From: Antechinus flavipes
Taxonomy: Eukaryota
Assembly (NCBI RefSeq): GCF_016432865.1
Contig: NC_067400.1
Span: 616,776,001 to 616,840,000, forward strand
Direction: 5' to 3'
DNA length: 64,000 nt
The position numbers and the translations under genes were made by a program. This document shows, piece after piece, positions 11,386-14,300 of the stretch (position 1 is its first letter; the number at the start of each line of letters is the position of its first letter). The notes beneath the pieces were generated by a model. It had not been told where the DNA came from. It saw only the letters and a program-made list of their open reading frames with translations, and made no database searches.

Positions 11386-14300
11386 CTGGAGGAGAGAGCA
11401 AAGCGTGAGAGGGAAGCCTGAGGCTGCCCAGAAGGGCCCGAGGTGGGGGGGAGGGGAGGGGAGGGGGGAGGGGAGGGGGGACCGCTCTCCCCAGAGGGCA
11501 GCCCCAGCACCCACTCACCTTCTATGATCTCCTCTTTGACTTTCTGAAGCTCCTTCCTCACCTCCTCCAGCAGTTCCTGTGAGGAGGAAAAGGGGCATCA
11601 GAGGGCCCCCCTCCCCCGGGCCGCGCGGGCTCTTAGCTCCCGCCTCCGGCCCCTCCTCCGTACCCTCCTCCGTACCTGCTTAATCCTGTCTAAGTCGGAC
11701 TCCTCGTGGGTGCCGGGAGTCGAGGTAGGGACCTCACAGCTCGTGACTGAGGTGGAAGACTTCATCCTGGGGACACAGACAGGGCATGGGCGGTCGGGGG
11801 CCCTCCCTGTGCCCCCCGGAAGCTCCCCGCTGCTACCCAGTGAGCACGGCCACCTCCCTGCCCGTCTCCTTGTGGGGCAGCGAGATGGGGGTGGGAGGGG
11901 CTGGGGGGGCCAAAGGGGCCCAGAGCCAGCGGCCATTGCCACCAGGGGCCTTTTCAGACTGGCCTCCCTCGCACCCCACACGGGGGCCCGCAGTGGCTGC
12001 CTTTGCCGGCCCCCCGGGTCGGGGGACTACGGCTCCGCCCCTGCGCGTCTGCCCCCCGAGGGGAGTCCCCACCTGACATTCGGGGAGAGGCAGGATCTCA
12101 CCGGCCGGGCACAGGCACCCGTGCGGGGGGCTTGGGAAGGCTCTCCGGGATTATCTCCCCATGCCTCCATTTTACAGATAGGGAAACCGAGACCCAGAAA
12201 GGACCAGGAACTACGGCAGGCGCCAAGCCCGATTAAGCAGAGACCCTAGAACGTAGGTGGGCAGAACCCCAGGGAGGCTCCCCCGCAGCCACTGTTGGGA
12301 CGCAGCCAGGGCAGGGTTCAAGCTTGACTCTCCGAGTCCCAGCCTCCCCACGCTCACCCCCAAGGGGCTTGCACTCACCTAGGTAGAGTTGTGCTGTTCT
12401 TTTCCCAAGGTCTCCGAACAGGCTCTGGAGAGTGAGGGGAAAGGGGGGCAAAGGTTGGGGGCTGGAGGGAGCGCCCCCAAAGGCACCCAGCTCAGGACAG
12501 ACCCAGGTCTCCTCCCTCCCCCACGCACTCACCATTCTGCGAGGGAATTCTTGTTTCACCTTCTTCCTGCTGGGGAAGGCGGAAAGGGAACTGAGTGCCT
12601 TGTCGCTGGCCCCCCATCTCCCTGCCTGCCCCCCCTTCTCTCCCTCCCTTTGGGCCGCCAGAGGACAGTTAGAAGAGTCTTGGGGAGACCCCAGGAGACA
12701 GGGAGGAGGAACCTTCCCCCCACTCCCCACTCACATTGGCAGAGTCGTCCTTGGCCGGGGGCTTCTCCCCAATTAACGTGGCTTTCCTCCTGCGGCCAGA
12801 AGAGGGTTGGGGGAGGGGTGAGTGTGGGGCCCTGTCCTGGGGAATCCCAGCCCGTCCCCCGGCATTCCCCTCCCAGGCTCCCCTCCTTCTTACTGGCCTT
12901 TTCCCTTCGGGACCCTGACCCTCCCTGAGCCGCCGGCTCCGCCCCCTCTGCCCTTCCCCACCCACAATGCCCCAGCACACAGTGGGCGCCCAGGGCACTG
13001 CTCCCAGGACGCGGGTACAGGACCGTGCCAGGCTCTCACCTCCGGGCCAACATGGCACTCATTTCCTCCATCAGCCCGCCGCCCGTGCTCCGAGTGCTCT
13101 CGGCCTTTGGGGCGGGCGGGGGCCCCGAGGACTCATCCTGCAGGGGAAAGGTCAGGGGGGCTGGTGAGGGAGCAGCTCCTCACACAGGCTCCCGCCCCCC
13201 GGGGTGCGGGTTCTCGCAGCCCACGGGTGTCCCGGAGCCACTGTCACAGCCGAGGTCTCCTGGGGACGCCCCGTCAGCCACCCAGTCCCACAGGCGGCGC
13301 CCACACAATCTCACCTTGGCGACCTTCCTGAGTTTGGCTCCGGCGATGGCTGCGGCCAGGCCCGGGGCGCCCCCGCCTCCCCCACTGGGGCCTTGGGCAG
13401 ACGGGAGTGGGGGTGCTGGGGGTGGGCCGCCCGCCCCTCCTGGGGCTGCAGACCCCGCGCCTGAGGGGGGCAGCCCAGGGGGTGGCGGGGGGCCGGGGGG
13501 AGGAGGGGGCCCCGGAGGGGGTGGGGGTCCCCCAGCTGGGGCAGCAACTGGGGCTCCTGAAATAAAGAAAAAACAGGAGGTTTGGGGCCTGAGGAGGGAG
13601 CAGAGGCTTGGGAGGCGGAAGGGGAACCTCCAGAACCGAGAACACAGACTCCCCGATGCCAGGGCAGGAGACACCGGCTCCTCGTTCCCCAGAAGGGGAA
13701 GTCAGGGCCCCGGTGCGTGAGGGGCAGGACCGGGAAGAATAATGGCCGAGCTTGAAGGAGACGCGGTCCCGGGGGGAGCTGAGGCAGCTGCTCCAGGGAC
13801 CAGGGTCCCGGCCAATGGCAGCCGGGCTGGGCAGGGGTCCCTTACCTGCATTGGAGACCCGGCGCTCCCTCTCCACCTGCTCCAGGTGCTCCAGCTGTTG
13901 CCTGAGGGAAAGCAGCAGTTAGGGGAGAAGGGACCTCTGCCGGGGGCCCATCGTGCTCCCTCAAGGTCAAAGGAGGAACAGGGAGAGTCGGCTCCTTCCT
14001 GAGAGGATTACTGCTCCAATTAAGTCAGGGGGATTAAGCGGGGGAGGGGCCCTCATTGCACCCCTCCCAACCAGGACCTAGAAGGAATAAGGGGAGCCTG
14101 GGGTGGGAGCGTCCCTTACCTCCTCTGCTGCTCCATCTCCTCTGCTGAGGGGCCGTTCTGGACAGACCAGTTTGCAGGGGGAGGGGGCGGCCCACCTGGA
14201 GGAGGGGGCACCGACCTTTAGGTCATCCCCATGAGGGGTCCCTCCCCCAGCCATGTGGACCCAGCCCCGTCTCTCTTGGGAGCCCCAAGACCTCCTTTGG

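What the first reader, a model, noticed from the sequence alone, without database searches (positions are those of the whole stretch)
13315..13335. VASP carries Ala at position 239, the PKG/PKA phosphosite (RKVS to RKVA)
Seen: exon 6 ends CTC AGG AAG GTC GCC AAG (LRKVAK), and the spliced CDS makes GCC exactly codon 239 of a 380-aa protein. The other known sites are kept: ERRVS157, RRKAT (277 here, 278 in human) and RMKS322. Known: human VASP Ser239 (RKVSK) is the preferred cGMP/PKG site, inhibits actin binding through the adjacent G-actin-binding motif, and is the readout of the platelet VASP-P assay. Inference: this animal may have a natural S239A-type VASP uncoupled from NO/cGMP control at this site. 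GCC is two changes from the recalled human AGC codon, although only one from TCC.
Basis: partly seen in the sequence, partly recalled or inferred. Interest (0 to 1): 0.72.

Follow-up and report, generated by a model that had tools for sequence, protein, structure and literature searches.

The report
Marsupial VASP naturally lacks Ser239
This marsupial's VASP gene really does encode alanine where placental mammals have the PKG-targeted serine 239, but birds, reptiles, several amphibians and many fish also lack that serine, so this is ordinary variation at a changeable site.

Summary
A 13-exon, all GT-AG VASP gene lies on the minus strand and encodes 380 aa. Exon 6 ends KLRKVAK|gt. GCC at 13320-13318 is codon 239, and S157, T277 and S322 are kept.

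The Ala codon is real. A non-identical contig from a public run shows no difference there. A relative about 4-5% diverged very probably has the same codon. All eight listed exonic differences among relatives are synonymous. RNA contigs of another relative confirm the exon 4/5 and exon 6/7 junctions.

Non-Ser is widespread at this position in VASP orthologues:
- Gly in three birds and three squamates, and in a caecilian.
- Ala in Xenopus, a finch, a ray, a paddlefish and catfishes.
- Val in a newt, and Pro in clupeids.

A gene tree of 28 orthologues needs at least 11 residue changes at this site.

Codons suggest the marsupial never had this serine. Marsupial GCC and placental AGC are each one step from the GGC/GGT of bird, snake and caecilian, but two steps from each other. 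So the lineage probably never carried Ser239, and the placental serine may be a gain.

No other marsupial family or monotreme could be obtained. Interest is modest: phospho-Ser239 assays should not work in this animal.

The parts
11348..23192 (-). VASP gene, coding part. 13 exons: 23192-23188, 15337-15166, 14682-14514, 14195-14120, 13901-13846, 13556-13315, 13137-13040, 12789-12735, 12569-12533, 12424-12379, 11766-11676, 11576-11519, 11385-11348 (TGA). Product 380 aa.
   Evidence: Assembly with all GT-AG borders. WH1 domain in exons 2 and 3. Sister to placental VASP with 100/99 support.
13315..13556 (-). Coding exon 6: proline-rich region (GP5 repeats) and the G-actin-binding motif, ending KLRKVAK at the donor site.
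   Evidence: Aligned to human VASP 2PBD chain V. The intron 6 joint 13137|13315 is seen in an RNA contig of run X15.
13315..13368 (-). G-actin-binding motif [18 protein letters not shown] (residues 223-240). The KLRK core is intact.
   Evidence: Motif definition from PMC10340426.
13318..13320 (-). Codon 239, GCC = Ala, at the position of the placental Ser239 (AGC).
   Evidence: Unchanged in the X1 contig, and by inference in X9. Codon comparison.
13853..13855 (-). Codon 157, TCC = Ser, in [10 protein letters not shown] (PKA-preferred site, kept).
12777..12779 (-). Codon 277, ACG = Thr, in RRRKATL (equivalent of human T278, the AMPK site, kept).
11757..11759 (-). Codon 322, TCT = Ser, in PRMKSS (PKD site, kept).

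Best explanation
This is the ordinary, intact, expressed VASP orthologue of a non-placental mammal. Other agents of this scan call the genome a dasyurid marsupial. Its residue 239, directly after the KLRK core of the G-actin-binding motif, is a fixed Ala. The protein has all working parts of VASP: EVH1/WH1 domain, GP5 proline-rich profilin/SH3-binding region, G- and F-actin-binding motifs and the tetramerisation coil. It should therefore promote actin filament elongation as in other mammals. [quoted passage not shown] Any cyclic-nucleotide or AMPK control must run through the retained S157, T277 and S322 (inferred, not tested). The Ala is not an exceptional loss. Position 239 switches among small residues (S, A, G, also V, P, N) across vertebrate VASPs, while the flanking KL[RK][RK] is invariant in every VASP sequence listed that holds the motif. 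By hand count of codon steps, marsupial GCC and placental AGC are each one step from the GGC/GGT (Gly) found in bird, snake and caecilian. So this lineage most likely never carried Ser239 after the amniote ancestor, and the placental serine is the derived state.
For: Gene model and numbering.
Codon is real: the X1 contig is a non-identical haplotype with 6 differences in 1277 nt, all listed, none at the codon. The 5.1-kb X9 contig (about 4-5% diverged) shows no listed difference in 13289-13353.
Constraint: all 8 listed exonic differences among relatives are synonymous third-position changes.
Expression and splicing: RNA contigs of run X15 join 13137|13315 and 13901|14120.
Orthology: WH1 domain; sister to placental VASP with 100/99 support and 83% identity.
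Lability: motif table and four-site table; at least 11 residue changes and at least 5 Ser/non-Ser switches on a tree of 28 orthologues.
Codons: window GCC; Fukomys and a Sciurus retrocopy AGC; Morus GGC; Crotalus GGC; Rhinatrema GGT; Camarhynchus GCC; Ranitomeya TCA; Gymnothorax AGC.
Function of the site: PMC10340426 and PMC4714978.
Against: No VASP from another marsupial family, a monotreme, a crocodilian or a turtle (exon 6 falls where the turtle locus has a gap) could be obtained, so the state of the therian ancestor is inferred from one marsupial lineage.
The codon-step advantage of a Gly ancestor is only one step (2 against 3).
Ser occurs in Mena and in many teleost VASPs, so Ser may be ancient deeper in the tree.
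For run X9 the conclusion rests on how the difference table was truncated. Runs X12 and X15 are undetermined at the codon.
All runs were contigs, which hide minor alleles.
No biochemical test was done.
Confidence: 0.75

Rival explanations
1. Secondary loss: the therian ancestor had Ser239 as in placentals, and this marsupial lineage replaced it with Ala, uncoupling VASP from PKG at this site.
For: All placental sequences seen have Ser, or Asn one step from AGC. Mena and many teleost VASPs have Ser, so Ser may be old.
Against: GCC is two steps from AGC, whereas birds, a snake and a caecilian carry GGC/GGT, one step from both. Every sauropsid sampled is non-Ser. This scenario needs 3 codon steps among amniotes against 2.
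Confidence: 0.2
2. Assembly or sequencing error, or a rare allele of the sequenced individual, at a GC-rich exon.
For: The exon is about 75% G+C. Only contigs, not raw reads, could be laid.
Against: A contig of run X1 that differs from the window at 6 other places has the same codon. A relative about 4-5% diverged shows no listed change there. The neighbouring differences are all synonymous.
Confidence: 0.03
3. Decaying or functionally relaxed gene copy in which the phosphosite no longer matters.
For: None beyond the substitution itself.
Against: Complete 380-aa frame and 12 canonical introns. Spliced RNA contigs in a relative. Only synonymous differences across exons 6-8. Short branch next to placental VASP. 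OPA3 lies convergent beside it.
Confidence: 0.02

Closest known systems
Human and other placental VASP (PDB 2PBD chain V; review PMC10340426)
   Same: Same 13-exon orthologue and the same domain order. 83% identity to bat VASP. Identical G-actin-binding core AKLRKV, same exon 6 donor position, and S157, T278-equivalent and S322 all present.
   Different: Ala (GCC) instead of Ser (AGC) at 239. One residue fewer directly after K240 (KDES against KQEE), which is why T278 is T277 here.
Xenopus tropicalis VASP (UniRef A0A803JE44, P0089) and Camarhynchus parvulus VASP (P0186)
   Same: The same natural KLRKVAK motif. The finch also uses GCC.
   Different: Distant lineages. Xenopus also lacks the ERRVS157 context (EQRIQS), and the finch reads ERRGT there.
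Bird and squamate VASP (Morus, Ciconia, Pogona, Sphaerodactylus, Crotalus)
   Same: No phospho-acceptor at this position. The flanking KL[RK][RK] core is kept and the exon boundary is the same.
   Different: Gly (GGC) rather than Ala. Birds also lack the S157 serine (ERRVAA).
Engineered S239A / S239A-T278A VASP mutants used in cell biology
   Same: The same residue change. In U2OS cells the double mutant behaves as constitutively active for actin assembly (PMC4714978).
   Different: Here the change is natural and fixed, and T277 is kept. The behaviour of the marsupial protein has not been measured.
EVL
   Same: An Ena/VASP family member without a phospho-acceptor after the G-actin-binding motif (KLRKVQR; PMC10340426).
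   Different: A different paralogue. The window protein groups with VASP, not EVL, and carries the VASP-only RRKAT site.

Membership tests
Ena/VASP family | N-terminal EVH1 (WH1) domain | tested here: met
   Pfam PF00568 hits exon 2 (E 6e-11, profile 10-59) and exon 3 (E 4e-20, profile 61-110).
Ena/VASP family | Central proline-rich region with GP5 repeats | tested here: met
   [20 protein letters not shown] in exon 6 of the assembled protein.
Ena/VASP family | EVH2 region: G-actin-binding KLRK motif, F-actin-binding motif and C-terminal tetramerisation coil | tested here: met
   [14 protein letters not shown] aligns to human VASP 2PBD chain V. [19 protein letters not shown] and [31 protein letters not shown] match placental sequences. 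The Pfam VASP_tetra model was not run, because the coil is split over two short exons.
VASP orthologue (not ENAH or EVL) | Groups with VASP in a gene tree and carries the VASP-only RRKAT threonine | tested here: met
   Sister to five placental VASPs with 100/99 support; fish EVLs form a separate clade. T277 sits in RRRKATL. OPA3 lies convergent beside it. The human gene order is from my own memory.
VASP as PKG substrate at the preferred site | Ser in RKVS directly after the G-actin-binding motif (human S239) | tested here: not met
   Codon 239 is GCC, Ala, and is confirmed in an independent contig.
VASP as PKA/PKG/AMPK/PKD substrate at the other sites | S157 (RRVS), T278 (RRKAT), S322 (RMKS) | tested here: met
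   All three are present by sequence. Actual phosphorylation cannot be tested with these tools.

The most novel reading that the evidence does not exclude
Ser239, the PKG-preferred site and the standard readout of NO/cGMP signalling, is a placental-mammal innovation. It would have arisen by a single GGC-to-AGC change after the split from marsupials. Marsupials, birds and reptiles never had it since the amniote ancestor, and frogs (TCA) and teleosts gained a serine separately. Direct cGMP/PKG control of VASP's G-actin-binding motif would then be a lineage-specific regulatory layer, not a general vertebrate mechanism.
Probability: 0.5. Interest if true: 0.45.

Novelty: new member of a known kind. 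Interest (0 to 1): 0.27.

Why it matters
Practical: phospho-Ser239 VASP antibodies and the platelet VASP-P readout should give no signal in this marsupial. By sequence the same holds for the sampled birds, squamates and Xenopus. Work on NO/cGMP signalling in these animals should use pSer157 or another PKG substrate.

Conceptual: one of the most used phosphosites in cardiovascular signalling is evolutionarily labile. The placental serine may be a recent gain. That makes the question of what this site adds to actin control testable by comparing natural Ala/Gly and Ser orthologues.

It does not reveal a new kind of protein or mechanism.

Tried and rejected
1. Three word-index protein searches returned no marsupial or monotreme VASP and no canonical human or mouse VASP. 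Only odd placental isoforms, birds, reptiles, amphibians and fish came back. The exon 6 reading-frame query found nothing useful. So whether Ala is marsupial-wide stayed open.

2. I tried aligning the window's exons as separate fragments to a full-length protein, to build a query profile. This gave a scrambled alignment and was dropped.

3. Read laying was run once on 1551 bases at 80% likeness. The difference table was truncated, with 94 rows hidden. The codon could therefore be read for X1 with certainty and for X9 by inference from the listing order, but not for X12 and X15. A narrower stretch would have been better.

I did not try it by other means and give only a hand count of codon steps and treekit's count of state changes.

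5. The turtle locus L007 has a 32-N gap and no G-actin-binding exon could be found in it.

6. Literature searches for VASP Ser239 in opossum or marsupial cells found nothing relevant.

7. The large representative search was not run. The protein's identity is not in doubt and clusters at 50% identity would not separate marsupials.

8. A metagenome pattern scan was considered and rejected: the chance of host marsupial contigs is negligible and there is a risk of human contigs.

Full report
**What is in the sequence.** The finding lies on the minus strand. Read 13335 to 13315, the letters are AAA CTC AGG AAG GTC GCC AAG (K L R K V A K), followed by the donor GTGAGA. From stop-free stretches and splice signals I assembled 13 coding exons between 23192 and 11348, every intron GT-AG. 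The CDS is 1143 nt and the protein 380 aa. Ala is residue 239 (GCC, 13320-13318). ERRVS ends at S157, RRKAT at T277 and RMKS at S322. T278 becomes T277 because one residue is missing right after K240 (KDES here, KQEE in placentals). Exon 1 (ATGAG|gt) is placed by sequence logic alone.

**What gene it is.** Exons 2 and 3 together match the Pfam WH1 domain. Exon 6 aligns end to end with the crystallised human VASP fragment of PDB 2PBD chain V. The only difference in the last 17 residues is S to A. In a maximum-likelihood tree the protein is sister to five placental VASPs (100/99 support, 83% identity to a bat VASP), and fish EVLs form their own clade. OPA3 exons lie convergent on the plus strand at about 6.4-9.4 kb. 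Another note of this scan places RTN2 further along the window. Other agents of the scan call this genome a dasyurid marsupial. My own data fit a non-placental mammal but do not name the species.

**Is the codon real.** Public runs of seven coded organisms hold this stretch at graded shares, from 0.84 down to 0.10. I laid four of them on 12700-14250.
- Run X1 has a contig covering 12700-13976 with six differing letters. All six are listed and none is in 13315-13335. So a haplotype that is not the assembled one carries GCC.
- Run X9 is about 4-5% diverged. Differences seen only in X9 are listed in ascending order up to 13661, with 20 of the 21 in its first piece shown, and none falls in 13289-13353. 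I infer the same codon there.
- For X12 and X15 the table was truncated, so their state is unknown.
- RNA contigs of X15 join 13137|13315 and 13901|14120, confirming introns 6 and 4. A loose end confirms the exon 8/9 junction.
- All eight listed differences inside exons 6-8 are synonymous third-position changes.

The gene is thus constrained and spliced in a relative, and Ala is not an error.

**How unusual is Ala at this position.** The protein database gave no marsupial or monotreme VASP, but it gave many other vertebrates:
- Placentals have KLRKVSK (one rodent has N).
- The birds Morus, Ciconia and Patagioenas have G. The finch Camarhynchus has A.
- The squamates Pogona, Sphaerodactylus and Crotalus have G.
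- The caecilian Rhinatrema has G, the newt Lissotriton V and Xenopus A. Two hyloid frogs have S.
- A ray and a paddlefish have A.
- Catfishes have A or N. Clupeids and the electric eel have P. A whitefish and a snakehead have A. Most percomorphs and a moray have S.
- EVL has Q.

The KL[RK][RK] core before the site is invariant in every VASP sequence listed that holds the motif. On a tree of 28 orthologues the site needs at least 11 residue changes and at least 5 switches between Ser and non-Ser. S157 and T278 are also far from universal: birds read ERRVAA and teleosts RRRKAA.

**Direction of change.** I fetched genomic loci and read the codon:

| Source | Codon | Residue |
|---|---|---|
| Window (marsupial) | GCC | Ala |
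| Fukomys | AGC | Ser |
| Sciurus retrocopy | AGC | Ser |
| Morus (bird) | GGC | Gly |
| Crotalus (snake) | GGC | Gly |
| Rhinatrema (caecilian) | GGT | Gly |
| Camarhynchus (finch) | GCC | Ala |
| Ranitomeya (frog) | TCA | Ser |
| Gymnothorax (moray) | AGC | Ser |

Marsupial GCC and placental AGC are two steps apart, but each is one step from GGC. Counting by hand:
- A Gly (GGC) amniote ancestor needs two steps among amniotes.
- An Ala or Ser ancestor needs three.

The frog serine uses a different codon family (TCA, one step from the GCN Ala codons), which points to a separate origin. So the marsupial most likely never had Ser239 after the amniote ancestor, and the placental serine is the derived state. 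This rests on a one-step difference and on a single marsupial lineage. Ser in Mena and in many teleosts means Ser could be older deeper in the tree.

**How it most likely works.** From established knowledge, the review PMC10340426 states the following:
- S239 sits directly after the G-actin-binding motif 223[17 protein letters not shown]239 and is the preferred PKG site.
- S157 is the preferred PKA site and PKG's second choice.
- T278 lies directly beside the F-actin-binding motif and is found only in VASP; PMC4714978 names AMPK among the kinases acting on S239 and T278.
- Phosphorylation of S239 and T278 lowers actin assembly, anti-capping and bundling.

The S239A/T278A double mutant acts as constitutively active in cells (PMC4714978). 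This marsupial protein keeps every structural part and S157, T277 and S322. It should therefore drive actin elongation normally but cannot receive a negative charge beside the G-actin-binding motif. PKG input, if any, must go through S157 or through another family member. All of this is inference; nothing biochemical was tested.

**Verdict.** The gene is an ordinary VASP orthologue.

The useful points are two:
- Phospho-Ser239 reagents should fail in this animal and, by sequence, in the sampled birds, squamates and Xenopus.
- Ser239 may be a placental gain. That needs monotreme and other marsupial sequences to settle.

Noticed in passing
window 14721-15143: A 103-bp unit repeated 4.1 times (90% matches) fills most of VASP intron 2. 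It creates long spurious open frames on the minus strand.
   Followed up: partly
window about 6400-6550 and 8990-9355, plus strand: OPA3-like exons ([15 protein letters not shown]... and ...[17 protein letters not shown]...) lie only about 2.5 kb apart and converge on VASP. From my memory the human OPA3 intron is far longer.
   Followed up: no
window 13137/13315 junction: The protein lacks the Gln that follows K240 in placentals (KDES against KQEE). The acceptor here is ctgcag|GAT. One rodent model (P0045) also lacks it.
   Followed up: partly
window 13314-13900 (run X15, record 19): An RNA-library contig of a related organism runs unbroken through intron 5 while skipping intron 4. This is either intron 5 retention or pre-mRNA.
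   Followed up: no
L003 201-1175: The Sciurus carolinensis protein annotated as VASP (P0060, 324 aa) is encoded by an intronless 975-nt frame, so it is a retrocopy. It keeps AGC at the Ser239 codon but has lost the S157 serine (KRWVAN).
   Followed up: partly
L007 (Platysternon megacephalum): The turtle VASP model (P0065, 287 aa, named 'Rho guanine nucleotide exchange factor 5' by its source) lacks the proline-rich and G-actin-binding exon. The locus has a 32-N gap and no such exon was found.
   Followed up: partly
protein database: No canonical placental VASP (human, mouse) and no marsupial or monotreme VASP was returned, only aberrant isoforms and non-mammals. Absences in this database for proteins close to human ones should not be read as biological.
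   Followed up: no
window 5190-6100: A purine-rich, low-complexity stretch gives long G/E/R/K-rich and S/P/L-rich open frames on both strands just upstream of OPA3 exon 1.
   Followed up: no
window 29121-29351, 31554-31712, 38569-38873, 51279-51610: Four runs of N, 1027 letters in all.
   Followed up: no
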